Positions 705 through 43,648 are shown, counted from the stretch's first letter. The stretch: DNA of 64,000 nucleotides from Magallana gigas (GCF_963853765.1 NC_088858.1:15500001-15564000); one strand, 5' to 3'. Made by a program: numbers and translations. Notes: generated by a model from the letters alone, not told the origin.

Positions 705-727
705 TGACGTCACTTAAGACTATAAAA
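705..727 (+). promoter_or_regulatory. Promoter of cluster gene 1: perfect CRE (TGACGTCA) plus TATA box
   Basis: TGACGTCA at 705-712 and TATAAAA at 721-727. AGGAC follows at 752, then a short exon ending at a GTAAGA donor (789). The same layout recurs upstream of the other three intact paralogs. Confidence 0.75.
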
Positions 728-749
728 GTAAAAATCTGCAGCTTGCAAA

Positions 750-788
750 CCAGGACACCTAACAGAGCCTCAGAGATCCAAGATACCG
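750..788 (+). other. Non-coding exon 1 of cluster gene 1 (start approximate)
   Basis: Begins about 30 nt after the TATA box and ends ...GATACCG|GTAAGA. The acceptor TTCTTTCAG at 1534 lies 2 nt before the ATG. Homologous motif GAGCCTCAGAGATCCA at 765-780. Confidence 0.7.
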
Positions 789-1536
789 GTAAGAAATCTT
801 GTCATATCTGCGTCTTGCATATAAATGTATTTATGATTCTAATATATAAGGTTTCTTTAGCAAAAGATAGAATATAGAATCTGTTTAATAAGAAAATAAC
901 TAAAATCATTTTCATTTTCGAAATTGTTGGAATCAAGAATTATAGTTTTAGGAAACTCTGCTTTGCAAGATTTGCATTTATTATTACGTCAGTGATTAAG
1001 TGATTTTCCTTTAGGAAAATAGTTAGGTTCTTTTCAAATGGAAAATTACATAAATTGTAAATTCTATAAAAAAGTTGGCTTAAAGGGTAACCATTACACG
1101 ACATTAAATCTTGAAAACAATGTCTTTTTTGTAATCACAATTTCCCAAAATGTAATTATTTCTTAAATAATAACAAAATGTTCTAATATAGTATGTATTT
1201 TTCAACTGGTAAATGGTTTTGTTCTGCAAAGTAAATATTCCAACTATCATATTAGAATAATGATACAGAGCAAGCTTCAGTTATCATAGAAGCTCGTTAT
1301 TAGCTAATAATGAACTCCATCACGATTTTTATTTTGCCATCTTACAAAAAGGTGACCATGGTGAAATTTAATTTTGTGTTTAGCGAATAATTGTCTTAAA
1401 ATATAATGAAAATCAACATCAACGTTCAATTCAAAAGTTCATGAAAAAATCCCCCGTACATTTATTTCTAATAAATTTCAATCTTCGTTATGATATTGCA
1501 TATACTTATTTCTATTGGGTATCTGTTCTTTCAGCA

Positions 1537-2400
1537 ATGTTTCGCGCAACTGTTCTCCTCTGCATTCTGGCCTATGCCTTCTGTGACTACGACAAAAAAC
1601 TTCCATACAGTGCAAACTATTACAGTCCAGGGAGTCTTTTCTCTAGGGGAGGATTTGGTGGAGGAAACATAGGATTCGGCAATTTAAGGGGAGGTAATCT
1701 CGGATTTGGCAATGTTGGTGGACTCAGAATAGGAGCACCTTCTTTTGGTGGAGTCAACTTTGGTGGATTTGGAGGTCAAAGTTTCAGATCCTTCTTTTCT
1801 AGTCCCGGAGGTGCTGCTGCATCAAGTGCTGCTGCTTCTGATGGCCCGTTTGGTGGATCTGCAGCATCTTCATCCGCAGCATCTGGTGGATTGAGAGGTC
1901 CGCAATTCTTTGGTGGTAACGTTGGCAATACTGGATTTCAAAGCTTCAGGTTCTTTGGTCCCGGTGGTAGCGTAGCTACTGGTAGTGCTGCCGCCAGTGA
2001 CGATGGCTCGGCTGCTGCTTCGTCTGCTGCGGCGGGTAATGGAGCTGCCGCGGCCTCAGCAGCTGCAGCATCTCCATCACTTGGATTTCCTGGCCTAACG
2101 TCATTCCCAGGCAATGTCTACCCCTATCCTGGAAGTTTCCCTACCTATCCCGGAAGTTTCTCTTCCTATCCAGGAAGTCTCTACTCATATCCTGGAAACG
2201 CGTACTCCTTTCCAGGTCAATCCTTTTATCCTGGAAGTTTAAACACCTTTCCTGGTAGTGTGTTACCCGGGTCCATTAATCGTCCTTTACACAGATCAAA
2301 GGTAAGAAACAAATCAAACCAAACTTTGATGAGTTGAATTTGCAAGAAAATGCAAATTGACTTTTTATCACATATGCAACACTTTTTACAGGTTTATTGA
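1537..2400 (+). CDS. Secreted Gly/Ala/Ser-rich silk-like structural protein, cluster gene 1 (257 aa; coding exons 1537-2301 and 2392-2400)
   Basis: ATG at 1537 follows an acceptor. Signal peptide MFRATVLLCILAYAFC then DYDKK. GGF/GGNxG repeats, AAASSAAAS blocks and 7-aa PGSxxxY repeats. Donor AAG|GTAAGA at 2302 and acceptor TTTTTACAG at 2391 give GTT TAT TGA, so the C-terminus is RSKVY*. Confidence 0.9.
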
Positions 2401-2484
2401 AAATGATTCGTTTGAAATTGCCCGACTCCTGGCTGCCCGAAAGACAAGGATCCTGTTCATGTTGTGTTATTATTGAATTTGTTG

Positions 2485-2490
2485 AATAAA
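2485..2490 (+). terminator. Polyadenylation signal of gene 1
   Basis: AATAAA 85 nt after the stop, preceded by a TG-rich stretch. Equivalent signals lie at 18003, 34051, 35482 and 42249 in the paralogs. Confidence 0.6.
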
Positions 2491-2870
2491 TGTTAAGCAT
2501 CCACGAAAAAGCAGATTTGAGTTTTTGTTTTAAGGTGTTAATGGAACATACGACATACATTTTCACTATTAACACTCTAAACCATTCCTCTACGCTGTTG
2601 GGTAAAAATATTGGGAAAGAAAATTATATATAATCAAATTGTTCTGAACATTGTTAACAATTGAAGCAATCCTTGAATTCGCAAAAATTGTACATCATGT
2701 AAATAATTGCTCAATTCTATATCAGGATCAATATAAAAAAAAATGTTGTATATTTGCACATATTAGTGCTTCCATTATACACATGTCTAAAAAGTTGCCA
2801 ATTTTTGTCCTATTTTTTGTAATCGCAAAATGCATTTCAAACATTTAAGGCCAATAACAATCAATTTATC

Positions 2871-3270
2871 TATGCTGTCTCAGTCCCAGACTGGTGTTGC
2901 AGCCAGTAACAAATAACCTCGAAACCATTGTAGTTCATCATAAACTTTTAATAGTAATGGCTTCACAAAAGGTAAATAACTGAAAAATGAATAAACAAAC
3001 AATAAGTTCCCACTTAACCCGAATTTTCTCTGATAATTTACGATACCCGGCAAACAACACACATTTAAAGCAAATCTAAATATTTCATTGCATAACAATA
3101 GAGTTAAACAAACACTTACATCGCTGTGGCACCTCACTGGTGTTCAAAACAAACAAAAACACAGCCCTCACTCGCACATGCCATGGCCATGCTGAGTTGC
3201 AGAGTCCCTGACGTAATAAACAAAACCGTCCAGGTTGGAATACGGATTTCCGAAAAAGCGTGACAGCACA
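2871..3270 (-). repeat. 3' LTR of the BEL/Pao element (400 bp)
   Basis: Direct repeat of 10046-10446, with one substitution and one A-run indel seen by eye. Adjacent to the PPT. Confidence 0.93.
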
Positions 3271-3280: not shown

Positions 3281-3287
3281 GACTAAA

Positions 3288-4268
3288 TTAGTCACTATCC
3301 AATTTCGGTGAGTAAAGGACGACCACCTCAGCCACTGGTCTTAAATATTCAACTTGGCGTCCTCGTCGGATGACCTTTACTCTTATTTTCCGAACCTTTG
3401 CATCTTCACTTAAGATTGCCTCTTCTACTAAACCAGTTGGCCAATCGGATCTCTTCATATCTTTTTCTTTTACCAGTACAACATCACCTTTATGAAGATT
3501 CTCTTTCTGTGTCTTCCACTTCCTTCTGGCTTGAAGACTCTGTAAAAACTCATCTTTCCATCTCTTCCAAAACCTTTCTGCCAACACTTGCACATGCTTC
3601 CAGCCCGCCCTGAACATGTCCCGAATGTCTAGGTTTTGAAGAGGTGGTATATCATCTCCTTCTTTCTGTGTTAATAATAAATTCGGAGAAAGAATAGTTG
3701 GATTTTCTGGGTCGGAGGATACCGGAACTATTGGGCGAGAGTTGATAATCATGCAAACTTCTGCCATAAAGGTTGTCAATACTTCATGCGTCAACTCCTT
3801 TCCAGAATTTTCAAGTAGCAGAGCGTCAATGATCTTTCTAGCCACACCTATCATGCGCTCCCAGACGCCTCCAAAATGCGATGAATGAGGTGGATTAAAA
3901 ATCCATGTACTACCTTCGCTCAGAAGGAACTTCTGAATAGTGGGATCTTCTACATTCACAGCATCTGTCTTTGTATCTGTTGATCCAACAAAATTGATTC
4001 CCCTGTCAGATCTATACTCCAGTACTTTTCCTCGAATGGAAACGAATCTACGCACGGCGTTTATGAAAGAGGAAGTTGACATCTGTTCCACCACTTCGAT
4101 ATGTACTGCACGGACTGTGAGGCATGTGAACAGGATAGCCCACCTTTTACTGTTCGCATGTCCACCGCGTGTTCTTCTACTGACAACATTCCAATGGCCA
4201 AATGTATCGACTCCTACATAGGTAAAAGGTGGCACCGGCTTTAGGCGACAAGCAGGAAGATCAGCCAT
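3288..4268 (-). pseudogene. Integrase core segment of pol
   Basis: MADLP..PFTYVGVDTFG..VHIEVV..SDRG.NFVG..PPHSSHFGGVWERMIG. In frame with the upstream segment but separated by a TAG at 4278-4280. Confidence 0.9.
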
Positions 4269-4277
4269 GATTTGTGT

Positions 4278-6556
4278 CTACAGCTTTCCTCTAAGTTTTG
4301 CACAAGTGACACAGTGATGTAAAATAGAGGATACCAATCTTTTGGCACCTATTATCCAGTACCCGGCATTGCGCAATGCTCCTGCAGTAATGTGTCGACC
4401 TTGATGATGTACCTTTTCGTGGTGATGTCTAACCAGCAAGACTGCAATGTGTGAACTCTTAGGAACAATGATTGGATTTTGCACGTTTCTTTCAAACTTT
4501 GCTCTCTTCAGCCTTCCTCCTACTCTAAGTACTCCTTCTTCATCAATGTAAGGATTAAGTGATGACAACGTACTGTCTTTGGGTATTGCGTTGCCACTTG
4601 TCAAACTTCTGATCTCTTTCTCAAAGAAACTCTTTTGGGCTATCTTTAGAATTAGCTGCTCCGTAGCTCTGAATTCCTTCACAGTTGTAGGACTAATATG
4701 AGATGTCTTCTTCACTGCCGCTTCTCTAAGCCGAGTCACACCATACACAAGCCTTTCCCAAGATGAAAACTTGGAGAACCTTTTCTCCCAGGTTGAAAAG
4801 CTAGGGAAGGAACCAGCTGTTTCTATTATTTTCCTCGTCGTAATCATAGGTCTGACTTCCGCGTCTTCATCTGGATTTACCATTTGATAGCTTTCATTTA
4901 TATCATGATCTGGAGAAGAAGCATGAAAGGAAGGTTTCCACCATTTACTATCTGCTAGATTCTTTGCTTGCACTCCTCTTGTTCCCACATCTGCTGGATT
5001 TTGCTCCGAGGGAATGTAGTTCCATTGAGCTGGCTGTGAAACACGCAATATCCTTTCTACCCTGTTACTTACATACGTGTAAAACCTTCTTGTCCTGTTG
5101 CTTAAATATCCTAAGACAACCTTGCTATCAGAGTAGAAGTATGTAGCGTCAACTGGACTGTCTAACTGCCTTGTTACAGCGGTAGCAATTTCAGATGCTA
5201 AAACAGCGGAACAAAGTTCTAATCTAGGTACGGTATGCCCATGTCTGGGTGAGAGTTTGGATTTACCAAATACAAAACCAAACTCATATTCGTCATCTGT
5301 CCTGAAAACCTTCAGATATGCCACTGCTGCCACGGCTTGCTCTGACGCATCTGAGTATACATGGAGCTCTGTCCTAATGGCCTCATTGAACGGAATAGAA
5401 GTGAACATCCTTGGAATCTTGAGTAAGGATAGATCACTTGCACTATTCTTCCATTCTGTCCATCGTCTCTCAATTTCTACAGGTAAGGGTTCATCCCAGT
5501 CACAAGACAATTCCATCAGCTCTCTAAAAATCATGCGACCCAGGAGAATAAATGGAGCAACAAACCCAAAAGGGTCAAAAATGCTGTGGAGAGTAGACAA
5601 GACACCTCTTTTAGTAAATGGCTTCTCTTCAAACTTCACTTGAAATGCAAATGAATCCGTTTGCAAGCTCCATTGTAGTCCTAAACTTCTTGAAAGTGGA
5701 ACATCATCCATGACACTTAAGTCCATATTTTCCAGATCTGATGCTCTCTCCTCTGGTGGGAATGCATTGACAACATCCTTGTTGTTGGAAACGACCTTAT
5801 GAAGGCGCAAATTTCCACCAGTCAATAGAGCAGCTTTTGTCTTTTTCATTATTTCAACAGCTTTCTCGGGTGATGTTGTCGAAAGCAGACCATCGTCCAC
5901 ATAAAAGTTCTTGTTAACGAAGTTTACTACCTCTTCACTTGTTGTAGGATTTACACTAACTGCCTTTCTCAGACCATATGTGGCAATTGCTGGAGATGGT
6001 GAATTTCCAAAACATGTTCACACATTCTGTATTCGACAAGTTCTTTGTCTGGGTCATTATCACGATGCCATAAAAACCTCAAGTAATTCCTATCCTCTTC
6101 TGCCACAATAAATCCAAAAAACATCTGCTCAATGTCTGCAACTACACCAATCACATCTTTCCGGAAACGAAGTAGCACTCCTACAAGGCTATTCGTTAAG
6201 TCAGGTCCACAAAGCAAGACATCATTCAATGAGGTATTCTCAAACTTTGCTGATGAATCAAAGACAACCCTCAACTTTGACGGTTTCTTTGGGTGATACA
6301 CCCCGAATATTGGCAAATACCAGCATTCCTCATTGGGCTGCAAGGGTGGCGCCAATTCTGCATGCTTCTCTAATATTCCTTGCATGTAGATATGAAAGTG
6401 CTCTTGTTTGCAAGGATTCTTTGCCAGAGTTTTGTTCAAAATCCTAGCTCGTTTCAATGCCATTACTCTGTTATCTGGTAACCTATCTCTTGGCGTTCTA
6501 AATGGCAGTGGAGAAACCCAGCTTCCTTCCTCATTCCGTTTACAGTGTATTTCCAT
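4278..6556 (-). pseudogene. RT / RNase H / integrase zinc-finger segment of pol
   Basis: WYLPIFGVYHPKKPSKLRVVFDSSA, DIEQMF, then a one-base deletion near 6010 (HVF-GNSPSP restored by adding one T). Followed by FYVDD, DASEQA, PRLELC and HH..HHQG..C..C. Confidence 0.9.
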
Positions 6557-6694
6557 AATCTTTAAGAACTCTCTATCCTCTATTGATAAACCCGGTTTAT
6601 CATCATCAGCTGTGCGTTCGAACAGTAAGGTACCAAAATCATTTGGTTTGCTGTAGCCCAGTCCGTAACCTTCACTGTATGTAAAACTGCTTGG

Positions 6695-9339
6695 TCAAGG
6701 AGGCATAATAGAGGTTCTTCCCGCCTTAACCATGTGTGTCTTCTTAACACAAATATCATCTGGAACATGAACTTTATCTAAACAAGCATCTCCAATCAGG
6801 GCCCAGCCTAACGGAAGCTTCTGAGCATAGGGTGAGCTCTTTCCAACTCTTTGATCTATGACATGATGTGCTTCCACCAGATCACGTCCCAGCAGTAGTA
6901 ATATAGGTGCATCATTCAAAGGCGGAATCTCGGACGCAATATCTGCTAGGTGAGGGTAGTGAAGCGCAATTTCTGGGGTTCCTATTTCATCTCGATTACA
7001 AGGTATGCTGTCGCATTCAGTGACAACAGGTAAGTTCAGTGTTTGTGTTGAATCCCATGATTCAATGACTAGTCCATGAGCCTGTCTACCGCATGTTGGT
7101 ACAGTGCCGGAACATGAAGAAATTGTGTAACATTTTGGTTCAGAGTAAATTCTCAACATGTCAAAGAACTCACTGCGAGCAAGGGACCTGTTACTCTGAT
7201 CGTCAACAAGTGCATAAATCAAAATGGCATTCTCCTTTTCTCCTTGTCTGTACACTCGTACAAGCAACATTTTGGCACATGATTTACCAACAAATTGTTT
7301 CCCGCAAATTTGTAAACAACAGGCTGAAACTGATGAAACACTATTTGTTGTTATACTGTCTATGACACGTTGCTCCCCGCCATGCTCTTTGTATGGGTGA
7401 TCAGATTTGACATCAGTGGGGTGAAGTGCACTACAGTGTTCAGTATTATCACAAATGTCACATCTTAAATTCACTTTACAGTCCCTAGCCATGTGTTTTG
7501 AATTACAGCACCGAAAACAAATTCCTTCTTCCTTTAACAATCGTTTACGGTCTGCTAGCTTCTTGGATCTAAACACACGGCAATCCTGTAGTGAATGAGG
7601 TGTCTTACTGTTCAAGTGAATCAAACAAACCTGAGAGAGTTCCTTGCCCTGCTTTGACACAAATTCAGTCTTGTTTGTTCTCACTGACACACGCTCTCTG
7701 TTTCTGCTACCACTAAAGGGAATAGAAGTCACATGTTCTTTACTCTTTGGCTTGGACTGGACATCATACTGGAATCCTGGGTCATTGCGTATACGACTCA
7801 TTTCTTGGAGAAACTGAACTAAGAAAGTAAAGGGAGGATATGACACATTGTTTTTCTTTTTATAGTTTGAAGCTTGAGTTGTCCATTTGTCCTGCAAGTT
7901 GTAAGGAAGTTTGTTAATTATAGGTATGATTCCTGATGAAGAGTCAAAGTAGGAGAGAAGAGTTGAATATTTTGGGTTCTCTTTGGCTGCCTCAATCTCA
8001 GCTAGTATGTCTGCTAATTCATACATTCGTTTGTTTTCCTTTATTGTTAGTCGAGGAAATTGTTCCAGTTTGGTTTTCAAGGCTAATTCCACAAGCTCGG
8101 GTGAACCATATCGTTCTTCTAATCTCTCCCATATACGTTTCAAGGCTCTATCTGGGTATGCAGCATTTGCGGCTCTTATACTTAAAGCAAACTTAGTAGA
8201 TTCCGGTCCAAGGTACTTTGCTAGTAAATCGACTTCTTCAAATGGCGTTACTCCAAGTTCTTCTGCAATACTTTTGAAACTTGTTTTCCATGTAACAAAA
8301 ACTTCAGGCCGATCAGTAAATTTAGTGAACCTGGAAAATAGTAATTCCTTCTTCAATAGGAATTTGGTGAGGTCCCTAACAACATTGTCACCACCAGTCT
8401 GTTTCACTTCAAAGGGAGCTGCATTTGGGTTCAATGAGCTTTTATGTGTATCTTGGTATACTGGAAGTGGTCGAATGTCTCTTATTTCTGGTCTTTTGAC
8501 ACTGGTTTCCTCATCTTCAGGACAGCTTTCATATACATACTTTGCCGTCAGTTGACTCCTGTCGACTGGTTCCTGCAGCAGTGATGGCTCTGGGGAGACA
8601 TGCCTACTTCCCATTTCTGTTTCCTCAAGTGCTCTTACTTCTGCTGCGGCAATTGCAAACTTTCGCTCTTGTTCTAGCAGTAGCATTTCAGCATCTAGCT
8701 CTTCTTTCTGTCGAGTCTGTTCTGCCTTATGCTTTGCTTCCTTTTCCTCCAAGGATGCCTTCTGTTTTCTCAACATCAGCTCTCTTGCTTCGTATTGTAG
8801 ACGGGCTCGTTGCGCTTCAACTTCCATCTTCTTTTTCGCTAGGAAACTCCCATTTGTAGAAGGCTCTCCAACCTCTGATCTAGTGAGTAGACCTGAACGA
8901 CTTGAACCTCTCTGTGATAGTCGTTCAGTTGCTTCAATTCTTGCCTCTCTGATACTTCTGCTTAACTCCTTCATAATGTCTCTACATTTGATTTGTAGAA
9001 CTTCTTGTACTCTTAATTCTGAAATACTGTCCTCTGTGTTTGTCCTATCAAGGAAAGCTAAGAAGTCCTCAGATTCATGTGCATGTTTGTTTTCAATTCT
9101 TGAAGCTCTTTATCCAATGTTCTCAGAGATTTAAAATCTAATTGTGTTTTATATTCATCAAGTTTCACAGCCATATCTTCAATATCAGACCAAATTGTAT
9201 CACATTTATAGAAATATTTCTTAACGGTTTCTTCATATAACACTTGACCCTTTTCTGTCTTTCTCTTTACTCTACCCCTACTTTCAAGTTCATCATGTTC
9301 ATCATGTTCAACACTGACTTCTTTTTCTGCATCAGCCAT
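6695..9339 (-). pseudogene. Gag-protease segment
   Basis: Probable start MADAEKE..RKTEKG..Y at 9339 with at least two frameshifts around 9090-8990. The ORF 8974-6695 has CCHC-type knuckles (CFRCCNSKHMARDC) and the protease motif ALVDDQSNRS. An in-frame TGA at 6695-6697 interrupts the frame that continues into RT. Confidence 0.88.
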
Positions 9340-14627: not shown

Positions 14628-14657
14628 GAATTATTTGTTTATATATATATAAAACGA

Positions 14658-16758: not shown

Positions 16759-16781
16759 TTACGTCACAGAAGTATATAAAA
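16759..16781 (+). promoter_or_regulatory. Promoter of cluster gene 2: TTACGTCA plus TATA box
   Basis: TTACGTCA at 16759-16766 and TATAAAA at 16775-16781, the same 8-nt spacing as gene 1. Exon 1 ends ...GATACAG|GTAAGA (donor 16843). Confidence 0.75.
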
Positions 16782-16996
16782 GGAGGAACTTCCAGTCCAC
16801 TAGTCAGGACATCATTCAGGGCCTCAGGGATTCAAGATACAGGTAAGATATAAACAACCATTGCAGCGCAATGTTCCTTATTGAAAAGATACGCTATTTC
16901 TATACATAGCTCTAAATCCATTAATGACTGCTCTTATCAAATATATGACGATATATGATGATGAAGTTATATTTCCTAAGTATTTGTATTGCAGTC

Positions 16997-17916
16997 ATGA
17001 TCCGCGCATGTGTTTTCCTTAGCATTTTGGCATTTGCCGTATCTGATTACGATAAGAAATACCATTATGGCACCAACATCTACCGTCCAGGAGGGTTTGG
17101 TAGAGGAAATCTTGGATTAAGTGGTCTTGGCGGGGGAAATCTTGGATTAAGTGGTCTTGGCGGAGGAAATCTTGGATTTAATGGTATTGGCGGAGGAAAT
17201 CTTGGATTTAATGGTATTGGCGGAGGACAATTTGGCTTAAGTGGTCTTGGCGGAGGAAATCTTGGATTAGGTAGTCTTGGCGGAGGAAATCTTGGATTAG
17301 GTAGTCTTGGCGGAGGAAATCTTGGATTAGGTAGTCTTGGCGGAGGAAATCTTGGATTAAGTGGTCTTGGCGGAGGGAATCTTGGCTTAAGTGGTCTTGG
17401 CGGAGGAAATCTTGGATTAAGTGGTCTTGGCGGAGGAAACCTTGGGTTTAGTGGTAACTTTGGTGGACTCCAAGTGGCAAGACGTTCATCTTTTGGGCCA
17501 GGAAGTGCAGCCTCGGCAAGTGCTGCTTCTTCTGGTGGATCTGCTGCTGCTTCAGCTGCTGCATCATCTTCATCCTTAGGTGGCTCAATATTCCCAGGAA
17601 GGGTTAACTCTTTTCCCCAACCGTACAGATTCCCTCAACAATATGGCTTTCCTGGCGGACAATATTACTTTCCTGGCGTACAATATGGATTAACCGGACA
17701 AGATGGCTTTTCTGGACAATATGGCTTCCCCGGACAAATCGGCTTTCCTGGACCGTTCAACTTTCCTGGTCAACAATCCCAGTACGGGATCAGTCCTCTC
17801 CCAAAGAGAAAGGTAAGAACAATGAAATCAATTTTTATTAAAACCTTTGTGTAAAAATTCGGACACATCAACATTTATTTGATATATATTTCATTCTTTT
17901 ATTACAGGTTTACTAA
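16997..17916 (+). CDS. Secreted Gly-rich silk-like protein, cluster gene 2 (274 aa; coding exons 16997-17812 and 17908-17916)
   Basis: Acceptor TTGCAG at 16994 and ATG at 16997. Signal peptide [16 protein letters not shown] then DYDKK. Twelve 10-aa [10 protein letters not shown]-type repeats, one Ala/Ser module and FPGQYG repeats. Donor at 17813 and acceptor at 17907 give GTT TAC TAA, so the C-terminus is KRKVY*. Confidence 0.9.
17099..17458 (+). repeat. 30-bp coding minisatellite, 12 units
   Basis: Consensus GGCGGAGGAAATCTTGGATTAAGTGGTCTT encoding [10 protein letters not shown] and variants. Confidence 0.9.
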
Positions 17917-18333
17917 AGAATATTCGGACAAGCACCCACTAGAAAATGGATCACTGGATACACAATGTTATTGTTGATTTCGGTTACTTGTTGGGGTTTT
18001 TCAATAAATATTATATGAGCATTCTTCATGGTCGATCTCGTGTTTTGATTTTACCTCATTTGTGTAAATTCCTTTTCTGCTTTTAAGCAAGCACTTTTAA
18101 ATGGTCTCGACTACACAGACATTTCTCTCTACTCTTTTTTGTATTGATGTTCAATAGGATTTTTATAACATGCGCGACTTTAAAACCAGTATTGGTGAAC
18201 ATTAAGCGTGGCCAGTAAAACATTTACTTAAACCGACGTGACTAAAAAATAAAAACTTACGTGAATAAAGCGAAAAATGCAAGATTAAGACAAAAGCGAA
18301 CATTTATTGTTGTAAGCATATAAATATAGAGGT

Positions 18334-30000: not shown

Positions 30001-31987
30001 GCGACTAATTTATGTCATTCAAAATGACACTTTGTAATTAACCGTCACTTAATTAGTGGTTACGATGACAGGTTTCAGTAGGACATTATTCATAATCGTC
30101 CAGACGTTTCTACTCAGTTTCAAACCCAATCAGTCATAAATTATCATGATCATCACCTTCTCTAAAACATTGGTTAATGGTTTTTTAAACTTAGCTTATT
30201 CATGTAAATTTAAAAAATTTTAGTCGAGCGAAAAAGATATAAACACTAAATGAAGGCATTATTATATAATTAATAAAAAAGGTATTCAACAAATGTTAAA
30301 ACCAATAAATTGGAGAATCTGAAAAATACCATAGAAATCAATTTATAAAAAAGTTGTTCATAAATGTTTTTAAAAAATATTAGCTCGATGCATTTAAACG
30401 TATCTACACTTCCTAACTTACGCTCGCATTTGTAAAATATCTTGTTATGTATACCCCATGTACAATGGATATGGTTTGAGAGAAACAATAAAATTACCAT
30501 TCATTGATAATAATATAAAATGAACACATTAAAAAGAATCCACACATGATAAAAACCAATGATATAAAACAAAATACGCCTTTTTAAAATGAAGTCATGT
30601 TTTAAAGATATGTATTATGTTGATTTTTATTTTAAAAAAGATTATATATCTTAACATTAAAACTTAATAATAATATTTGAAAGAATATGTAGTTTCATAA
30701 TAAATTAAAAAGTGGTGACTTTTTTTTTTAATTTTGAGATTCCCCCATTCTTTCAATTCCACAGGAGTTTCTTTGATCCTATACGTTCAAAACGTGCACA
30801 TTTATGTGTCCATCTCTACGAGCGTTCGTCGATACAATTTTTTGTTATGTTCTAATTTGATTTACCCTCAATGCTTCGATAAGAAAATCTTTTTTAAAAT
30901 CGTATGTAATAACGAGCGAGAGTTTACTAGTTTTATAATAAGACATATACGAATTTGTAAAATATTTTGATAGCAAAACTATTGATAATGTCCCTAATTT
31001 TTTAGTTTGTTTTTAATTGACATTAAGAATCGCAAATTGGAATTGTGATTAAAGTGGTCCATAACACCCCCAACAACACTAAATCCACTAAACTGTTTGA
31101 TTCCTGACATCATTAAAGATCTTCAATCTTAATTAAGTAGAAAATTTTTTTAAAATTTGCTCTTTCGATTCACACTATTCATTTATTTAAAAGGATCTTA
31201 AATATGTTTAATGTTTAATAAACAAATTAAAAGCGAATATTTTTGTATTTAACAAAATTTCAAAATTTTAATGTTTATTTTAATTTCATGTTACAGTTTT
31301 GGGACAAGGTAAACTGTTTTTAAATGAGCTGTAAAACATTAAGTGAAACAATAATTTCCCCTTCCTCATTTAACACCGTTTAAGAAGAACTTTCAAGAAA
31401 GAACAAATCCATAACCAAATTATATAGCAATATTTTCCCCCTAATGCGTAGTTGAAAAGAACTGTCAAAAACAAAAGGATAACTTACCCTCTAATTTGTT
31501 CAGGACAAACTTTCTATCGTATTCTGTTTTTTTAACATAACGAATAAGTATTTTCTAGATCTGAACCATTTAAAAAATATTGTATGTGTGTCAACAGTTT
31601 TTTATAAGGACAGTTAGGTTAAAGGTGACTATAAACTTTTTGTAATCTCACAATTCTGCGCTTTGTTTCCATAAATATATTAGTAACAACCAATGAATAT
31701 TAATTCAATTATCAAACAAACAAGATAACTGTGCTCTGAATTTGATGACTAAGAGGAAGTGGAATTATAATGTGGTTGAGGAGGAGCATGGTCCAATATA
31801 ACGGGAATATGATTTATATAACTATATCAAAAATAGATTATACAAGATTAAAAAAAGAAAAGTCATTACCTTTCATGAAATAATCATCATGATCAAAACG
31901 TATGATTAGTTTGTCTCAAATTTGCATCATAATCACGTTCCACTGTTTTATTTTTAAGAATTAGTTTGTTTTCATGCTTTACATTGA

Positions 31988-32015
31988 TGACGTATGTTTT
32001 TGAAAATATATAAAA
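31988..32015 (+). promoter_or_regulatory. Promoter of cluster gene 3: TGACGT plus TATA box
   Basis: TGACGTAT at 31988-31995, TATAAAA at 32009-32015, AGGAC at 32039. Exon 1 donor CAG|GTAAGA at 32078. Confidence 0.72.
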
Positions 32016-32788
32016 GGGATACGGTTAAACAAAACAGTAGGACTTTTAGTTTAAGAGCCTCCAGATCCACACAGCAGGTAAGAAAGAAATACACCTCTCG
32101 TTTACATTTCGCAGCTTCTAAATCGGATTTTTTTTAAACTGTATTAGTCTCCCTAAGAAGAAAAGTTCTGTGCTTATGCTTTCTTTATTTTCTATACTTA
32201 ATAATAGTTTAAAGCTTAACAAATAATATCGAACAATATAGAGAAGATCTGATGGTTATATTAAATTGTTGACCACCCAGCTACCATAAACGGGGCTAAG
32301 TAAATTAAGAAACGCCAAAACTTCAAATTCAATAGTCGATTGCTCATATTCCTATTTTTTCTGTCGAACAATAGTTCAAATGAAGCCATTCGTTTAATTA
32401 CATTATAAGTATATTTAAACTACTTTTCAATAAAAAAAATCAATAATAATAGACTCATATATATCTGATAAATCATTGTAGATGATTAAATGTAAGTTCA
32501 GATATTATTTATTGTCAACGATTTTTTTTATAAACCCAAGTAGTAAGGAAAATAGCGGCTTTTTAGTACTTAGTAGAATGAATTTAACGGTATCTATGTT
32601 AAATACTTTTATCTCATGAAATGTGCACCTAAATACGGTTCCAACAATATGCTTTAAGAATAGTTGAATGATGTATTACCGAGAAAGCACTATCACAAGC
32701 CCTATCCTAAATTACAACATTGAATAAAAATTGGCAAAATATACACATCTTTTTTTTAGACCCAACTATTTGTCTTCCATTTGTAGTC

Positions 32789-33956
32789 ATGATCAAGCAA
32801 ATCTTCCTCCTCTGCTCCTTGGCCAGTGTTTTTGCCGATTCTGAAAAATACGGTGGTTGCAATGGCTACGGATGTGCCGTTGGTGTAAACCAGTACGGCC
32901 CAGGGGGTGCATCCAGTACCTTCTTTTCCTCTGGAGGAATTGGCGGACAGCAAGTATTGGGTGGACTTGAACATCAATTGCTCGGTGGATCTTTAGGAGG
33001 TCTAGGACCCATTGCTGCCGGTCCAGGTGGCGCTGCTGCTTCAAGTGCCGCTGCTTCCAGTGGGCGCTTTGGAGGCTCTGCTGCATCATCAGCAGCAGCT
33101 AGTGGAGCACCAGGTTTAAACTTTGCAGGACCCGTTGGTTTTGGAAACAATGGTTTCAATGGTTTCAATAGCTTTGACGATGGCAACTTTGGCTTGAATA
33201 ATTTTGGATTGAATTCCGCCGGGCCCGGGGCTGCTGCCTCATCAAGTGCCGCTGCTGCCGGTGGACCTTTTGGTGGAGCTGCTTCCTCCTCAGCCGCTGC
33301 ATCAGGTGCTCCTGGTTTCGGTAACAACGTCGGTTTCCCAGGTCTTCAAGGATTCCAAGGTGGTTTCCAAGGATTCCAAGGTGGCCTTCAAGGATTTCAA
33401 GGTGGTCTCCAAGGATTCCAAGGTGGTCTTCAAGGATTCCAAGGTGGCCTTCAAGGATTTCAAGGCGGTCTCCAAGGATTCCAAGGTGGTTTCCAGGGAG
33501 TACAAGGGTTCCAGGGATTCCCAGGCGTCCCATCCTTTGGATTTCCAGGGAGTGCTGCAGCCGGAGCCGCGGCTTCTAGTGACGACGGATCAGCCTCCGC
33601 ATCCTCTGCTGCCTCTACTGGTGCCCAAGCCTCCGTTTCTGGTTCAAATTTCCCAGGTATTGGACGACCTTATCCATTCCCCGGAAGTGTACTTCCTACC
33701 TATCCCGTTGTACCGCAAGTTTACCCAGGAGTCCCCACTTACCCACTTCCAGGCGTATCCACTTACCCAGTCCCAGGGGCGCCCGTAACATCTTATCCAT
33801 TTCCCTCGCGTAGACCATTCAGACCGATTGGAAGGGTATGTATCTTATTTATACGGCATCTTCATGTCTTACTCTAAGCAGAATCTTTATTTTTCAATTC
33901 TATTAAGCATTCAAATGTAAACAAACTTTTTTTTTCTATTTCAGAAGGTATATTGA
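32789..33956 (+). CDS. Secreted Gly/Ala/Gln-rich silk-like protein, cluster gene 3 (352 aa; coding exons 32789-33835 and 33945-33956)
   Basis: Acceptor TTGTAG at 32786. Signal peptide MIKQIFLLCSLASVFA then DSEKYGGCNGYGC. Three Ala/Ser modules, GGLQGFQ heptads and a PGVPTYP region. Donor at 33836 and acceptor at 33944 give AAG GTA TAT TGA (RKVY*). Confidence 0.9.
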
Positions 33957-34593
33957 GAAAATTTGTCCAGAAATACTCAATCCAGGAATACTTTGATACC
34001 ATCTCATATTGTTGTTGTTGTGTATCTGTTTTAAAGCAATCAAATTATTAAATAAATAATACTTGAATTGTTGTGCTTTGTATCATCACCATTTAATGCT
34101 AAACAAAAGGTTTATTGTGGTTTAAACGTTTTTCGTTTAGCATCAATTCCTTATTAATCCAGTTAACGCGAAATCTTATGTTCAAAGATGTAACAATTTT
34201 TATGAATAGGACCATTGTCCTCGAACATTCATATCATCTAAATTGTGCAATTACCTATTTTCTGAAATATTGATTCCTCACAGTGTATGAAAAGGGTTTG
34301 GTTGTTGGAACGCAGTAAACGTTGGATATAAAATGCGCATTTGCCAGTCATGAAACAAGGGGTACTAATCTAAATTATTGTGAAGGTAGACGCCTGAATG
34401 AAAACTAATTTTGATGGGACCTTTACTATTTCCAGCCATTCACAGTCAGTTTTGTGAATTTCACGTATTTTTCAAAGTAATTTCATTCAAATAATTGACA
34501 ATTCTCATATGGCTCGTCGTAGTGACACCAGAAAATCTATTCAAGCAAAACGAGATTACGCTTTTTTTAAAACCAAAACCTTAAGACAGCATG

Positions 34594-35405
34594 AGGACCC
34601 GTTGGTTTTGGAAACAATGGTTTCAATAGCTTTGACGATGGCAGCTTTGGCTTGAATAATTTTGGATTCAATTCCGGTGGAGCTGCTTCTGCAGCCTCTA
34701 GCGCTGCCGCCGCCGGTGGACCTTTTGGTGGAGCTGCTTCCTCCTCAGCCGCTGCATCAGGTGCTCCTGGTTTTGGTTTGAATGTTGGTTTCCCAGGTCT
34801 CCTAGGATTCCAAGGTGGTCTCCAAGGATTCCAAGGTGGTCTCCAAGGATTCCAAGGTGGTCTCCAAGGATTCCAAAGTGGTCTCCAAGGATTCCTAGGT
34901 GGTTTCCAAGGAGTACAAGGTGGTTTCCAAGGAGTACAAGGGTTCCAGGGATTCCCAGGCGTCCCATCCTTTGGATTTCCTGGAGGTGCTGCAGCCGGAG
35001 CCGCGGCTTCTAGTGACGACGGATCAGCCTCCGCCTCCTCTGCTGCTTCTACTGGCGCCCAAGCCTCCGTTTCAAGTTCAAAATTTCCAGGAGTCCCCAC
35101 TTACCCAATTCCAGGCGTGCCCACTTATCCACTTCCAGGCGTACCCACCTACCCAGTTCCAGGCGTACCCACTTACCCAGTTCCAGGCGTGCCCACTTAC
35201 CCACGTCGTGGCGTACCTAGTTACCCACTTCCAGGCGTACCTTTACCCCCTTTTTCAGGTCAACCACGTAGACCATTTGGAAAGGTATGTATCACTCAAT
35301 TTTCGAACAACAATTGCAAATGTAACTCTTAGCTACATCTTTATTTTGCAGCCATGCAATTAAAGGTTTAACATTTTCCTTTTTCTCTTTCAGAGGGTAT
35401 ATTGA
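34594..35405 (+). pseudogene. 5'-truncated paralog (cluster gene 4): 3' two-thirds of exon 2, intron, last exon and polyA signal
   Basis: Starts abruptly at AGGACCCGTTGG, mid exon 2, with an in-frame TGA at the junction and no promoter, exon 1 or signal peptide. Open for 230 codons to a donor at 35285. Acceptor at 35393 gives AGG GTA TAT TGA (KRVY*). AATAAA at 35482. Confidence 0.85.
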
Positions 35406-36375
35406 GAAGTTGAGAATAAACCAATCCAGAAATACACTGATCACCATTTGCAATATTGTTGTTGTGTGTCTGTTATTAAGCAATAAAAAAAAATAACAAT
35501 TTCTACTAGACTTTTTGTTGCTTGTTGATACATTGTTTAAATGCTTTTAATTTACTGACAATACGGCTTACTGTGGTTTTATCAGTTTTTTTCTGTTTTG
35601 CGGTAAAGTGTGATGATTTTATTTGTTCAGCCGTAGTTGAGGCGATCAACGAAATTAAATTTTCAGTAATAAATCGAATTCACATCAATTTTAATGAATT
35701 TTGTAAGACAATTTTAAACAAAGCTTCGTATAATTAAAACTGAGCATTGTACATTATACAAGACGATTAAATGCTTATGGTGTATGAAAAGGAATTTATT
35801 ACTGGAAAACAGCGAATTTTACAATGTATATTAAATGTGTACTGTGGCATGGAGCGCAAATACTCTTTACTGTAAAAGAGGACGCTCGTTTAATACGGCA
35901 AGTTTATAATCCTTTGCATTTTCGGTCAACTATAGGCCGATCAATTTGGAGTATTTTTGTAGAAGTTTCTTCACACTTCTAGCATGTTAAAATAATCTCA
36001 CTCTATAACAGAGATACACTAAATCTGAAGACATCAAATATAAAACTTAATAATTTTTGTTTTTACTTTGCACGCAATGAATTATTTGGTGAAAATAACC
36101 AATGGAAGCAAACTGAAAAAATTAAAAACATAAATCTTCATTAAACACACAGAATGCTTGACTGGCATTTTGGAATGACCTTTGAATTAAAATTAAATCG
36201 ACAGTTTCTATTTAATTAGGTTGGCTCACTACAGTACACCTCTTTGAAATAGTTTCTCACAGAAATTTACATGATTCTGATGGAAATGGTTTATAAAAGT
36301 ATAGAAATCGATGGAAATTTTGGATTAAAAAATAATTTTTTCAAGCATTTAGTTCAGTCAATGTGAACAAAATCC

Positions 36376-40418: not shown

Positions 40419-40445
40419 TGACGTTGTTTTTGAAAATATATAAAA
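40419..40445 (+). promoter_or_regulatory. Promoter of cluster gene 5: TGACGT plus TATA box
   Basis: TGACGT at 40419-40424, TATAAAA at 40439-40445, AGGAC at 40469. Exon 1 donor CAG|GTAAGA at 40510. Homology to the gene 3 promoter extends about 400 bp upstream. Confidence 0.72.
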
Positions 40446-41028
40446 GGGAAAAGGTGAAACAAAATAGTAGGACTTGTAGTTTAAGCGCCTCCAGATCCAC
40501 ACACAACAGGTAAGAAAGATCTACATCTAATCGTTTGTACATTGATGAAGCCGACCACCGAGCAATTATACTTTTCTCCGTAAATAAAAACCAACTTGCC
40601 CCTCTCCTTTTTAAAAAAATAATTGAGTTTGTTTACCTATACAAAATGTTTCTACTTCAGATATTTGCATGAATATATACCTTTTTAAATTAAAACCATT
40701 TCAAATCATTTGAAATGAATACAGGTACTTTCGATTGTACATAAGGGATCATCTGATTTTGTCACTAGGTTTATCCTACAACACTGGCTAATTTTATGTT
40801 AAAAAGTATGATAAAAAATACCTCTGTTTTAAACAACCCTCTCCTTTGAATGTATCGCTAAAACAGTGTCCTAATTATGCTTTAAAAGAATTGTTAGCAT
40901 TTTCAAAAAATCTAACCTGGGAAATATAATCACAAAAATTTTTTTTAATATCGTCTAAACAAGAAAATAATAATGCAACATTAGACAAACATGTTTAAAA
41001 AACCCATCTTTTTTCTCTACTTGTAGTC

Positions 41029-42154
41029 ATGATCAAACAAATCATCCTTCTGTGTTCCGTGGCCAGTGTATTTGCCGATACTGAAAAATATGGTGGCTGC
41101 AATGGCTATGGATGTGCCGTTGGTGTAAACCAGTACGGCCCAGGGGGTGCATCCAGTACCTTCTTTTCCTCTGGAGGAATTGGCGGACAGCAAGTATTGG
41201 GTGGACTTGAACATCAATTGCTCGGTGGATCTTTAGGAGGTCTAGGACCCATTGCTGCCGGTCCAGGTGGCGCTGCTGCTTCAAGTGCCGCTGCTTCCAG
41301 TGGGCGCTTTGGAGGCTCTGCTGCATCATCAGCAGCAGCTAGTGGAGCACCAGGTTTAAACTTTGCAGGACCCGTTGGTTTTGGAAACAATGGTTTCAAT
41401 GGTTTCAATAGCTTTGACGATGGCAACTTTGGCTTGAATAATTTTGGATTGAATTCCGCCGGGCCCGGGGCTGCTGCCTCATCAAGTGCCGCTGCTGCCG
41501 GTGGACCTTTTGGTGGAGCTGCTTCCTCCTCAGCCGCTGCATCAGGTGCTCCTGGTTTCGGTAACAACGTCGGTTTCCCAGGTCTCCAAGGATTCCAAGG
41601 TGGTTTCCAAGGATTCCAAGGTGGTCTCCAAGGATTCCAAGGTGGCCTTCAAGGATTTCAAGGCGGTCTCCAAGGATTCCAAGGTGGTTTCCAGGGAGTA
41701 CAAGGGTTCCAGGGATTCCCAGGCGTCCCATCCTTTGGATTTCCAGGGAGTGCTGCAGCCGGAGCCGCGGCTTCTAGTGACGACGGATCAGCCTCCGCAT
41801 CCTCTGCTGCCTCTACTGGTGCCCAAGCCTCCGTTTCTGGTTCAAATTTCCCAGGTATTGGACGACCTTATCCATTCCCCGGAAGTGTACTTCCTACCTA
41901 TCCCGTTGTACCGCAAATTTATCCAGGAGTCCCCACTTACCCACTTCCAGGCGTATCCACTTACCCAGTCCCAGGGGCGCCCGTAACATCTTATCCATTT
42001 CCCTCGCATAGACCATTCAGACCGATTGGAAGGGTATGTATCTTATTTATACAGCATCTGCATGTCTTACTCTAAGCAGAATCTTTATTTATCAATTCTA
42101 TTAAGCATTCAAATGTCAACGAAATTTTTTTTTCTATTTCAGAAGGTATATTGA
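41029..42154 (+). CDS. Secreted Gly/Ala/Gln-rich silk-like protein, cluster gene 5 (338 aa; coding exons 41029-42033 and 42143-42154)
   Basis: Signal peptide MIKQIILLCSVASVFA. The body is nearly identical to gene 3 but has two fewer heptads. Donor at 42034 and acceptor at 42142 give AAG GTA TAT TGA (RKVY*). AATAAA at 42249. Confidence 0.9.
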
Positions 42155-43648
42155 GAAAATTTGTCCAGAAATACTCAATCCAGGAATACTTTGATACCCT
42201 CTCATATTGTTGTTGTTGTGTATCTGTTTTAAAGCAATCAAATTATTAAATAAATAATACTTGAATTGTTGTGCTTTGTATCATCACCATTTAATACAAA
42301 ACTAAAGGTTTATTGTGGTAAACGTTTTTCTTTTAGCATCAATTCCTTATTAATCCAGTTAACGCGAAATCTTATGTTCAAAGATGTAACAATTTTTATG
42401 AATAGGACCATTGTCCTCGAACATTCATATCATCTAACTTGCGCAATAACCTATTTTCTGAAATATTGACTCCTCACAGTGTATGAAAAGGGTATGGTTG
42501 TTGGAACGCAGTAAACGTTGGATATAAAATGCGCATTTGCCAGTCATGAAACAAGGAGTACTAATCTAATTTAATCTGAAGGTAGACGCCTGAATGAAAA
42601 CTAATTTTGATGGGATCTTCACTATTTCCAGCCATTCACAGTCAATTTTGTGAATTTCTCGTATTTTTCAGAGTAATTTCATTCAAAAAATTGACAATTC
42701 TCATATGGATCGTCGTAGTGACACCAGAAAATCTATTCAAGCAAAACGAGATTACGCTTTTTTAAAACCAAAACCTAAAGACAGCATGTCTAATGATATA
42801 TTTTTATATAATGTACATAGTCTGCACACAATTATTGCAATTACCAAATGAAAGGAAACAGAGAATTATACTTTCAGCCTGAACTGAATTGCTGAACTAT
42901 CTGATTAAACTAAAATGTCTAAAAACTCAAGTTTGCAACTCAATGAAACATTTAGATCGCTAGACATAAAAAAACAAGAATAGAATAATTTAATAATATA
43001 AACAACTCAAAACGCAAGTATATAAACACATTTACTTTTCAAAACTTCAATTCAATATTTAAACTTTTTATAAGCAGTAACGACTATAGAAGTATGCATT
43101 ACGAAATATCAATTCTTGTTCAGCGAAAAGCCGTCGAAGCATTTGAAGCATTACGACGTTTTTTGTTCTATCTTAACCCTTTAAAAACGTCAAAATTGCA
43201 TATAACCTCTATTTTGATTTTACCTTATACATTCTAACATGAAACTAAACTTTATAGGACTTGAGAATATGGTGGATAAGTATTTAAGCTTCCGTTTCTT
43301 TAACAAAGAATCTTGCAATTTACGGTACAGTAGAATTCTCTCTTTTTTAAATAATAAACCTGTTTTCCTAACAAAACAATTTTTATGGAATTATGATTAA
43401 AAATATCAAAGCAAATGTAAAAAAAAATTCAAAAATGTAGTGATGAAACATTAATTAGTATTCCTAGGCTTACTTATAACTACAGACTCTGAGAAAATTT
43501 GTAGCTTAGACATATTAATACCTTGTGCTAAGCCTAACCCTTTTCTAACGTATTACTAAGCGTAATATTACAGCTGTACGTAAGCAAAATGAAGATATCG
43601 ATTACATTGATGGTAAGACAGTATCATAACAAAGTTAATCCATTGTCA

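What the first reader, a model, noticed from the sequence alone, without database searches (positions are those of the whole stretch)
705..42254. Tandem family of secreted silk-like Gly/Ala/Ser proteins with one shared gene blueprint
Four intact genes and one fragment, all on the plus strand across 42 kb. Seen in sequence: the intact copies share a CRE-like site, a TATA box, a non-coding exon 1, an ATG exactly 2 nt after the acceptor and a 16-aa signal peptide followed by D-x-D/E-K. All five share Gly/Phe-rich linkers, Ala/Ser blocks, a Pro/Tyr/Gly region and a basic tail. Established knowledge: mollusc shell-matrix and periostracum proteins such as shematrins, Shelk2 and MSI60 are secreted Gly- or Ala-rich repeat proteins. 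The motifs here ([29 protein letters not shown]) are not the GGY or long poly-Ala motifs I associate with those families. Inference: a co-regulated, possibly undescribed family of biomaterial (shell, ligament or cement) fibre proteins.
Basis: partly seen in the sequence, partly recalled or inferred. Interest (0 to 1): 0.85.

Follow-up and report, generated by a model that had tools for sequence, protein, structure and literature searches.

The report
Oyster tandem silk-like secreted protein genes
A 42-kb stretch of the Pacific oyster genome holds four working genes and one broken copy of an oyster-only family of secreted, silk-like Gly/Ala/Ser-rich proteins built on one conserved three-exon plan; at least one is strongly transcribed, they are probably building blocks of shell or another secreted material, and public annotation has them misnamed and wrongly fused.

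Summary
Four intact genes (A, B, C, E) and one 5'-truncated copy (D) lie on the + strand between 705 and 42254. All intact copies share one plan:
- an ACGT-core (CRE-like) site 6-20 nt before a TATA box, then a roughly 40-nt non-coding exon 1;
- an ATG 2 nt after the acceptor and a 16-aa signal peptide;
- one large exon, a phase-0 intron, and a last exon that adds only (K/R)VY before the stop.

Stranded poly(A) RNA reads confirm both introns and the start site of gene C. Exon depth is 500-850 against about 0 in introns.

The window is Crassostrea (Magallana) gigas. A profile search of 1.84 billion proteins found relatives only in C. gigas, in Saccostrea ('spidroin-2-like', 'shematrin-like protein 2') and on two metagenome contigs. 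The promoter motif and exon plan are kept in these relatives, and dN/dS is 0.16-0.35.

There is no Pfam domain, and the AlphaFold2 model is disordered. The family fails the tested marks of shematrin, spidroin, elastin and MSI60. I could not compare it with Shelk2.

I read it as an uncharacterised oyster family of silk-like structural proteins. Tissue, material and co-regulation remain untested. The scan has reported other secreted repeat-protein clusters in this genome, but not this family.

The parts
705..728 (+). Gene A promoter: TGACGTCA (705-712) and TATAAAAG (721-728)
750..788 (+). Gene A non-coding exon 1. The 5' end is estimated from the TATA position; the donor GT is at 789
   Evidence: modelled by homology to gene C, no RNA laid on A
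1535..2301 (+). Gene A exon 2 (ATG at 1537; 255 codons; signal peptide MFRATVLLCILAYAFC, then DYDKK)
2392..2505 (+). Gene A last exon: VY, stop, 3' UTR; AATAAA at 2485
16759..16842 (+). Gene B promoter (TTACGTCA, TATATAAAAG) and non-coding exon 1 ending at 16842
16995..17812 (+). Gene B exon 2 (ATG at 16997; 272 codons). Contains 11.8 copies of a 30-nt repeat (17103-17455) encoding [10 protein letters not shown]
17908..18025 (+). Gene B last exon: VY, stop, 3' UTR; AATAAA at 18003
31988..32077 (+). Gene C promoter (TGACGT, TATATAAAAG) and non-coding exon 1; RNA 5' ends at 32049-32054, exon ends at 32077
32787..33835 (+). Gene C exon 2 (ATG at 32789; 349 codons). Nine copies of a 21-nt repeat (33341-33525) encoding GGLQGFQ. 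From about 32870 onward it is nearly identical to gene E
33945..34075 (+). Gene C last exon: KVY, stop, 3' UTR. Read depth collapses after about 34036; AATAAA at 34051
34593..35284 (+). Fragment D: 3' two-thirds of the large exon of an older gene (230 codons), with no promoter, signal peptide or ATG. Nearly silent in run X22
35394..35500 (+). Fragment D last exon: RVY, stop, 3' UTR
   Evidence: this splice is seen in run X21 on a D-like allele
40419..40509 (+). Gene E promoter (TGACGT, TATATAAAAG) and non-coding exon 1
41027..42033 (+). Gene E exon 2 (ATG at 41029; 335 codons; 7 copies of the 21-nt GGLQGFQ repeat)
42143..42270 (+). Gene E last exon: KVY, stop, 3' UTR; AATAAA at 42249

Best explanation
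This is a tandem array of an oyster-restricted (Crassostrea plus Saccostrea) gene family. It encodes secreted, intrinsically disordered, silk-like structural proteins of 23-32 kDa, about 50% Gly+Ala+Ser plus Phe and Pro.

Shown here:
- One conserved three-exon plan: a TATA promoter with an ATGACGT-type bZIP/CRE site, a non-coding exon 1, an ATG directly behind the acceptor, and a final micro-exon adding ..VY.
- A signal-peptide-like N-terminus.
- Abundant, correctly spliced, strand-specific poly(A) mRNA of gene C. E-type bases appear in 31-57% of reads at a C/E-diagnostic site.
- Purifying selection, and rapid turnover of the internal repeats.

Inferred:
- The proteins are exported by secretory epithelium, most likely the shell-forming mantle, into an extracellular material, most likely the organic framework of the shell or periostracum.
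- The short Ala/Ser blocks supply beta-sheet-prone segments, and the Gly/Phe/Leu/Gln repeats supply amorphous spacers.
- The Pro/Tyr region and the invariant terminal Tyr supply sites for tyrosinase-type oxidative cross-linking.
- The basic tail and the single conserved DDG spot supply contacts with acidic matrix or mineral.
For: - Gene plan and promoter.
- RNA: strand-specific depth of 545-852 in the exons against 0-0.7 in intron 1 from a 1% sample of run X22; GT..AG junction reads for both introns; 5' ends 35-45 nt after the TATA box.
- Signal-peptide heuristics, composition and pI (A and B 9.7-9.9; C and E 6.9-8.0).
- Disorder: mean pLDDT 43, with only the signal helix confident. No Pfam domain.
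- The family is real beyond composition: z = 7-19.
- Distribution: the profile search of 1.84e9 representatives gave 12 hits, the real ones being C. gigas, Saccostrea and two metagenome contigs.
- The same plan in Saccostrea cucullata and S. echinata and on an ENA contig: ATG 0-3 nt after the acceptor, a phase-0 intron, a last exon V(xx)Y, and ATGACGT(C) followed by TATA.
- dN/dS is 0.35 between the two Saccostrea orthologues, 0.23 for D against E, and 0.16 for C against E.
- Literature: bivalve silk-like, repetitive low-complexity secreted proteins are shell framework components (PMC4660305, PMC4944945). Shematrins and KRMPs end in basic residues plus Tyr (PMC3896809).
Against: - No tissue, developmental stage or protein-level evidence was obtainable. 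Run names are coded, and no paper in the library mentions these accessions.
- Published C. gigas shell proteomes were reported to lack silk-like proteins (as cited in PMC5379566 and PMC4660305). However, gene E gives tryptic peptides of 4, 73 and 242 residues, so it would escape standard proteomics, and the old gene models were chimeric.
- Transcription of A and B was not tested. The Logan contigs that match them are genomic.
- Beta-sheet formation, cross-linking and mineral binding are inferred from composition only.
Confidence: 0.55

Rival explanations
1. The proteins are secreted structural proteins of a different material from the shell: the hinge ligament, or the larval or adult cement.
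For: The composition (Gly/Ala/Ser/Pro/Tyr, basic, disordered) would also suit elastic or adhesive materials. NCBI's automatic name for one model was 'elastin'. The PGVPTYP-type 8-residue repeats in D recall Tyr/Pro adhesive motifs (my own knowledge). Expression differs strongly between runs.
Against: No evidence separates this reading from the shell reading. Oyster ligament proteins are usually described as Met/Gly-rich (my own knowledge), and this family has essentially no Met outside the signal peptide. The closest annotated relatives carry shell-matrix-type names, and those names are automatic.
Confidence: 0.2
2. These genes are simply copies of shelk2, the silk-like mantle-edge gene of the Pacific oyster described by Takahashi et al. 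2012 (Gene 499:130), so the family is already described.
For: As I recall its abstract, that paper reports several gene copies, a spider-silk-like Ala-rich protein and the motifs GSAn(S) and GXNAn(S). Gene A contains GGSAASSSAAS and GNGAAAAS. The second gene in the Saccostrea locus L002 contains GSAAAS... and GRNAAAAS and ends KKVY on the same exon plan, so Shelk2 may belong to the same wider family.
Against: Shelk2 is described as mostly poly-Ala motifs. Here Ala is only 5-14% and the longest Ala run is 4, and most of each protein is Gly/Phe/Leu/Gln repeats and a Pro/Tyr region. The Shelk2 sequence and paper are not held, so no alignment was possible.
Confidence: 0.15
3. The proteins are Gly-rich secreted immune or antimicrobial effectors rather than structural proteins.
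For: A and B are basic (pI 9.7-9.9) and Gly-rich. A C. virginica paper mentions 'spidroin' genes in connection with Vibrio resistance and lists them beside ctenidin-like genes (PMC12040131).
Against: They are much larger (23-32 kDa) than known Gly-rich antimicrobial peptides (my own knowledge). C and E are near neutral. The Ala/Ser blocks, the Pro/Tyr region and the expanding repeats fit matrix proteins. Nothing here links this particular family to immunity.
Confidence: 0.05

Closest known systems
Shematrins and KRMPs of pearl oysters (Pinctada)
   Same: Secreted, Gly-rich, repetitive low-complexity proteins in rapidly evolving tandem families. The C-terminus is a few basic residues ending in Tyr (RKKKY, RRKKY and similar; PMC3896809), against KRKVY, GRKVY, RSKVY and GKRVY here. 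A Saccostrea relative is auto-named 'shematrin-like protein 2'.
   Different: There are no GnY repeats. Tyr is only 3-5% and confined to a Pro/Tyr region. Ala/Ser blocks are present, and a Val sits between the basic residues and the terminal Tyr. No Pinctada protein was hit by the exhaustive profile search.
Shelk2 (Crassostrea gigas; Takahashi et al. 2012)
   Same: Same species, multi-copy, silk-like Ala-containing secreted protein. Motifs of the GSAn(S) type occur here in short form.
   Different: Ala runs here are at most 4 residues, and Gly/Phe/Leu/Gln repeats and a Pro/Tyr domain dominate. The sequences could not be compared because neither the paper nor the sequence is held.
MSI60 and other silk-fibroin-like nacre framework proteins
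   Same: Alternating Ala-rich and Gly-rich blocks in a secreted framework-type protein.
   Different: MSI60 has long poly-Ala and poly-Gly blocks and is much larger (my own knowledge). No sequence relationship was detected. Oysters make foliated calcite, not nacre.
Spider spidroins and vertebrate elastin (the names given by automatic annotation)
   Same: Only the composition (Gly/Ala/Ser/Pro) and the repetitive, disordered character.
   Different: No spidroin terminal domain and no other Pfam domain was found. No Lys/Ala cross-link domains were seen in the translated sequences. The size is ten times smaller than a spidroin. These names are misnomers.
Silk-like structural proteins (SLSPs) as defined by McDougall, Woodcroft & Degnan 2016 (PMC4944945)
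   Same: Signal peptide plus a Gly-rich repetitive low-complexity body; lineage-specific; presumably expressed where an external structure is made.
   Different: SLSP is a descriptive class, not a homologous family. Belonging to it says little about the material or the mechanism.

Membership tests
Shematrin | Gly-Tyr-rich GnY repeats followed by a hydrophobic residue (PMC3896809) | tested here: not met
   Tyr is 3-5% of the mature protein. The repeats are [10 protein letters not shown] (B) and GGLQGFQ (C, D, E), with no GGY arrays.
Shematrin | C-terminal signature RKKKY, RRKKY, RRRKY or PRKKY | tested here: inconclusive
   The tails are HRSK-VY, PKRK-VY, IGR-KVY and FGK-RVY: basic residues and a terminal Tyr are present, but a Val intervenes and the exact motif is absent.
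Shematrin | Detectable sequence homology to Pinctada shematrins | tested here: not met
   The profile search of 1.84e9 representatives returned no Pinctada protein. Only NCBI's automatic name of a Saccostrea relative points to shematrin.
Shelk2 | Primary structure mostly poly-Ala motifs GXNAn(S) and GSAn(S) (abstract of Takahashi 2012, from memory) | tested here: not met
   The longest Ala run is 4 and Ala is 5-14%. A/S blocks make up only about 10-15% of each protein.
Shelk2 | Sequence similarity to the Shelk2 protein; mantle-edge expression induced on shell repair | not testable with these tools
   The sequence and the paper are not held, and the runs carry no tissue labels.
Spidroin | Conserved non-repetitive N- and C-terminal spidroin domains | tested here: not met
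   No Pfam family at E <= 1 for any intact member.
Elastin | Alternating hydrophobic VPGVG-type and Lys/Ala cross-linking domains | tested here: not met
   There are 7-11 K+R per protein, placed at the two ends, and no KAAK-type motif was seen in the sequences. No Pfam hit.
Silk-like structural proteins (descriptive class, PMC4944945) | Signal peptide plus a Gly-rich repetitive low-complexity region | tested here: met
   16-aa signal-like N-terminus; Gly 21-33%; tandem peptide repeats; predicted disorder.
Shell matrix protein (operational definition) | Protein identified in the shell by proteomics, or the gene expressed in mantle epithelium | not testable with these tools
   No accession of this family was found in the papers or supplements searched. 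Tryptic peptides of C and E are 73-248 residues long, so absence from published lists is uninformative.

The most novel reading that the evidence does not exclude
These genes, together with sister clusters in the same genome that also end in a tiny Tyr-terminal exon, may be the 'missing silk' of the oyster shell. On this reading they are an abundant framework component that tryptic proteomics and chimeric gene models have hidden. The 'basic residues plus terminal Tyr on its own micro-exon' module would then be an ancient shared cassette that links them to the shematrin/KRMP-type proteins of pearl oysters. That would mean one exon-plan superfamily whose repetitive middle is freely replaced.
Probability: 0.2. 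Interest if true: 0.7.

Novelty: new member of a known kind. Interest (0 to 1): 0.45.

Why it matters
[quoted passage not shown] This window holds a strongly transcribed, conserved, oyster-specific family of exactly that kind of protein.

Two facts would have hidden it. It has almost no tryptic sites, and its public gene models are fused or truncated. Correct models make the question directly testable by non-tryptic proteomics and in situ hybridisation.

The conserved promoter motif and the ..VY micro-exon are concrete handles on how mantle secretome genes are regulated and how their products are finished or cross-linked. The C/D rearrangement, with an intact allele still expressed in other animals, shows how such families turn over.

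Tried and rejected
- Pfam on all five proteins gave nothing. The only line was a sub-threshold Cornifin match on D.
The exhaustive profile search was the informative one.
- Hits to fish 'proline-rich protein 7' and to P0013 and P0017-P0019 are compositional matches (the GGLQGFQ-like repeat or Ala/Ser runs). I rejected them as relatives.
- AlphaFold2 gave no fold (pLDDT 43), so I made no fold search.
- Literature searches for shelk2, spidroin-2, K1R654, LOC105324963 and the XP accessions found no characterisation of these genes. McDougall 2013 (PMC3627088) is not held. Supplements of two C. gigas shell-proteome papers were absent or had no match.
- The Logan contigs matching A and B are genomic, not cDNA, so they give no expression evidence.
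- A strict CRE/TATA/GTAAG regex missed the Saccostrea promoters. Aligning the two Saccostrea upstream regions found them.
- No exon-joined protein was sent to any search tool. Searches used the large exon by reference. Joined sequences were used only inside one script for length, mass and pI.
- The N-masked stretches (45396-48399) were left untouched.
Full report
WHAT IS THERE

Six-frame ORF listing and direct reading show five related coding stretches on the + strand:
- A: 1537-2301
- B: 16997-17812
- C: 32789-33835
- D: 34595-35284
- E: 41029-42033

A tblastn of all five against the whole window finds no further copy.

Each intact gene has the same layout.
- An ACGT-core site (A TGACGTCA, B TTACGTCA, C and E TGACGT) lies 6-20 nt before a TATA box.
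- A short non-coding exon follows, ending ..CAG|GTAAGA or ..CCG|GTAAGA.
- The intron is 150-750 nt long.
- The acceptor AG is followed by two bases and then the ATG.
- One large exon carries all but the last two or three codons.
- A GT donor in phase 0 and a roughly 90-110-nt intron follow.
- The last exon reads VY-stop (A, B) or KVY-stop (C, E), followed by a 3' UTR with AATAAA.

D has the same 3' end (RVY-stop). It begins abruptly at 34593/4 with no ATG, signal peptide or promoter.

The promoter pattern ACGT-N6-20-TATAWAAR occurs six times in the 64 kb against 1.27 expected, and no shuffle reaches six. Four of the six are these promoters.

IS IT MORE THAN COMPOSITION?

Local alignment scores of the mature parts, with signal peptides removed, exceed 200 composition-preserving shuffles. 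The z-scores are 19 (A-B), 12.6 (A-E) and 7.3 (B-E).

The multiple alignment shows a fixed order of modules:
- the signal peptide;
- an acidic start, D-[YST]-[DE];
- in C and E only, a YGGCNGYGC motif, the only two cysteines in the protein;
- paired Ala/Ser blocks of the type GGAAASSAAAS..GPFGGSAASSAAASG;
- a variable Gly-rich repeat region;
- a second A/S block with an almost invariant SDDGS-type spot;
- a Pro/Tyr region;
- a basic tail.

The variable region is made of young DNA repeats:
- 11.8 copies of 30 nt in B (peptide [10 protein letters not shown]);
- 9, 8 and 7 copies of 21 nt in C, D and E (GGLQGFQ);
- 6.5 copies of 24 nt in D (PGVPTYPx).

TRANSCRIPTION

RNA runs of the same organism hold 74-82% of the sampled words of the C exon. 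I laid two stranded poly(A) raw-read runs and two RNA contig sets on 31900-35600.
- Reads are almost all in one orientation (first mate on the - strand), which means RNA of the + strand.
- Depth is 545-852 in exon 2 in run X22 from a roughly 1% sample of the run, against 0-0.7 in intron 1.
- The junction 32077|32787 (GT..AG) is seen in 7 + 35 reads. A further 38 + 146 reads have overhangs that spell the end of C's own exon 1.
- The junction 33835|33945 is seen in 55 + 313 reads and in two RNA contigs.
- RNA 5' ends lie at 32049-32054, 35-45 nt after the TATA box.

At a C/E-diagnostic base (33724), 31-57% of reads carry the E letter. This is consistent with E also being expressed. The Logan contigs that match A and B are genomic.

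FRAGMENT D AND THE ORIGIN OF C

C and E are 97-100% identical from about 32850 to 34593. That span covers the rest of exon 2, intron 2, exon 3 and about 530 nt of 3' flank. Their promoters and first introns are only 50-76% identical, apart from about 92% over the TATA box and exon 1.

The identity block stops exactly where D starts, and D's first base corresponds to E position 41367. D itself is an old relative of E, with dS 0.35.

So an E-derived segment was copied into an older gene. That gene's 3' part survives as D. This agrees with the separate first-stage note s1-392515.

The read-laying adds population evidence:
- In run X22, D is nearly silent (depth 1-3).
- In run X21, D-like reads reach depth 33-84 over the D exon. 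All carry fixed differences from the window. They splice the D-type last intron (13 reads).
- At D's left edge, 25 of those reads continue into sequence that encodes ..GAPGFSFGGPVG.., the sequence of the Logan protein P0001 and of XP_019921347.1.

An intact, expressed version of the older gene therefore still exists in other oysters.

WHOSE GENOME, AND WHO ELSE HAS THE FAMILY

Cluster look-up ties the near-identical Logan hits to three Crassostrea/Magallana gigas records:
- XP_019921347.1, 'PREDICTED: elastin', is a chimera of the start of B and gene C.
- XP_011422548.1, 'uncharacterized LOC105324963', is the N-terminal half of E.
- K1R654, 570 aa, is an ab initio fusion of A, the translated promoter and exon 1 of B, C/E and D.

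A profile of seven members, searched with HMMER against 1.84 billion representatives, gave only 12 hits at E <= 0.001. The credible hits are:
- C. gigas;
- Saccostrea cucullata and S. echinata 'spidroin-2-like' (P0004, P0005);
- S. cucullata 'shematrin-like protein 2' (P0016);
- an ENA metagenome contig (P0002, P0003);
- a JGI metagenome contig (P0014).

No Pinctada, Mytilus, scallop or non-bivalve protein appeared.

The Saccostrea loci keep the plan:
- ATG 0-3 nt after the acceptor;
- a phase-0 donor after K/R residues;
- last exons VNIY, VPVY, VY and VY.

P0016 is in fact two tandem genes fused by the annotator. Its middle is the translated non-coding exon 1 of the second gene.

The promoters of the two Saccostrea orthologues align with ATGACGTC, 12 nt, TATAAATA, and an exon 1 ending ..GATCC..CAACAG|GT. 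The ENA contig has TGACGT, a TATA-like box, an exon 1 resembling that of C and E, and ATG 2 nt after the acceptor.

dN/dS is 0.35 between the Saccostrea orthologues and 0.16-0.35 between the window paralogues.

The family is therefore conserved, constrained and, as far as sequence search can see, confined to true oysters.

WHAT THE PROTEINS ARE LIKE

Properties of the mature chains:
- Mass is 23.5 kDa (A), 24.7 kDa (B), 31.9 kDa (C) and 30.5 kDa (E).
- Gly+Ala+Ser make up 48-51%.
- Phe is 7-10% and Pro 5-9%.
- pI is 9.7-9.9 for A and B, and 6.9-8.0 for C and E.
- Each has only 3-7 acidic and 7-11 basic residues.
- The longest Ala run is 4.

Pfam finds nothing. AlphaFold2 with the family alignment gives mean pLDDT 43, and only the signal helix is confident.

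An in-silico tryptic digest gives peptides of 4, 73 and 242 residues for E. For C, only 2% of residues fall in peptides of 7-35 aa.

HOW IT PROBABLY WORKS

Shown: these are secretory-type precursors made from abundant mRNA, under purifying selection, with a conserved promoter element and a conserved terminal micro-exon.

Inferred from established knowledge of bivalve repetitive low-complexity matrix proteins (PMC4660305, PMC4944945, PMC3896809): they are structural components of a secreted material, most probably the organic framework of shell or periostracum made by the mantle.
- The Ala/Ser blocks are short beta-sheet-prone segments.
- The Gly-rich repeats are flexible spacers whose length is tuned by repeat gain and loss.
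- The Pro/Tyr region and the terminal Tyr are cross-linking sites.
- The basic tail and the DDG spot are contact points for acidic matrix or mineral.

None of these biochemical steps was tested.

COMPARISON WITH KNOWN FAMILIES

Shematrins and KRMPs are the nearest in design: secreted, Gly-rich, tandem, with a basic end closing on Tyr. Their GnY repeats and exact RKKKY-type signature are absent here, and no sequence homology was detected. I do not file the family as shematrin.

Shelk2 of the same species is the likeliest already-named relative. This remains the main open point for novelty.

The names 'spidroin' and 'elastin' reflect composition only.

The family fits the descriptive class of silk-like structural proteins.

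EARLIER NOTES OF THIS SCAN

Earlier notes describe other C. gigas clusters of secreted repeat proteins. One has a three-codon Tyr-ending last exon (s1-380954) and one has a 'Tyr end' rule (s1-366431). I did not test those loci. They suggest that the terminal-Tyr micro-exon is a wider design in this genome.

VERDICT

- Observation: confirmed.
- Interpretation: partly supported.
- Kind: a new (uncharacterised, misannotated) member family of a known class.
- Interest: moderate. The main reasons are that it makes the 'no silk in oyster shell' claim testable and that the blueprint is unusually well conserved.

Noticed in passing
window 32760-35500: Gene C is a mosaic. Its promoter, intron 1 and first ~80 nt of coding sequence are its own. 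From about 32870 to 34593 it is a near-identical copy of gene E, including 530 nt of E's 3' flank. The displaced 3' part of the older gene follows as fragment D. In run X21 an intact allele (older 5' half joined directly to a D-like 3' half) is transcribed and spliced. In run X22, D is silent.
   Followed up: yes
window 3288-8974 (- strand): A BEL/Pao-type LTR retrotransposon lies between genes A and B. It has long open reading frames (759, 195, 540 and 326 aa) with Pfam Peptidase_A17 (Pao retrotransposon peptidase) and DUF5641.
   Followed up: partly
window 43649-44140 (- strand): A Thr/Pro-rich mucin-like ORF (134 aa; TTTPPTTT-type peptide repeats from 21/42-nt DNA repeats at 43729-44006). 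An ACGT...TATAAAAA motif of the same type as the silk-like gene promoters lies at 44110-44140 on the same strand, just upstream. It may be another secreted repetitive gene.
   Followed up: no
public records for this locus, and L002:10001-15473: Public gene models are wrong. K1R654 (570 aa) fuses A, translated promoter and exon 1 of B, C/E and D. XP_019921347.1 ('elastin') joins the start of B to C. S. cucullata XP_062581258.1 ('shematrin-like protein 2') fuses two tandem genes through the non-coding exon 1 of the second.
   Followed up: yes
window 17103-17455, and L006: Gene B carries 11.8 copies of its 30-nt repeat in the window. A Logan genomic contig of the same gene (96.5-98% identical) has only about two. 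This is either a large allelic length difference or repeat collapse in a short-read assembly.
   Followed up: partly
L001, L002, L003: In Saccostrea the YGGCNGYGC-type gene (like C and E) is a single gene. The DYDKK-type gene (like A and B) sits in a separate tandem group on another contig. In C. gigas both types lie within 42 kb.
   Followed up: partly
window 45396-48399: Four N-masked stretches (45396-45526, 45555-45695, 46405-46555, 48153-48399).
   Followed up: no
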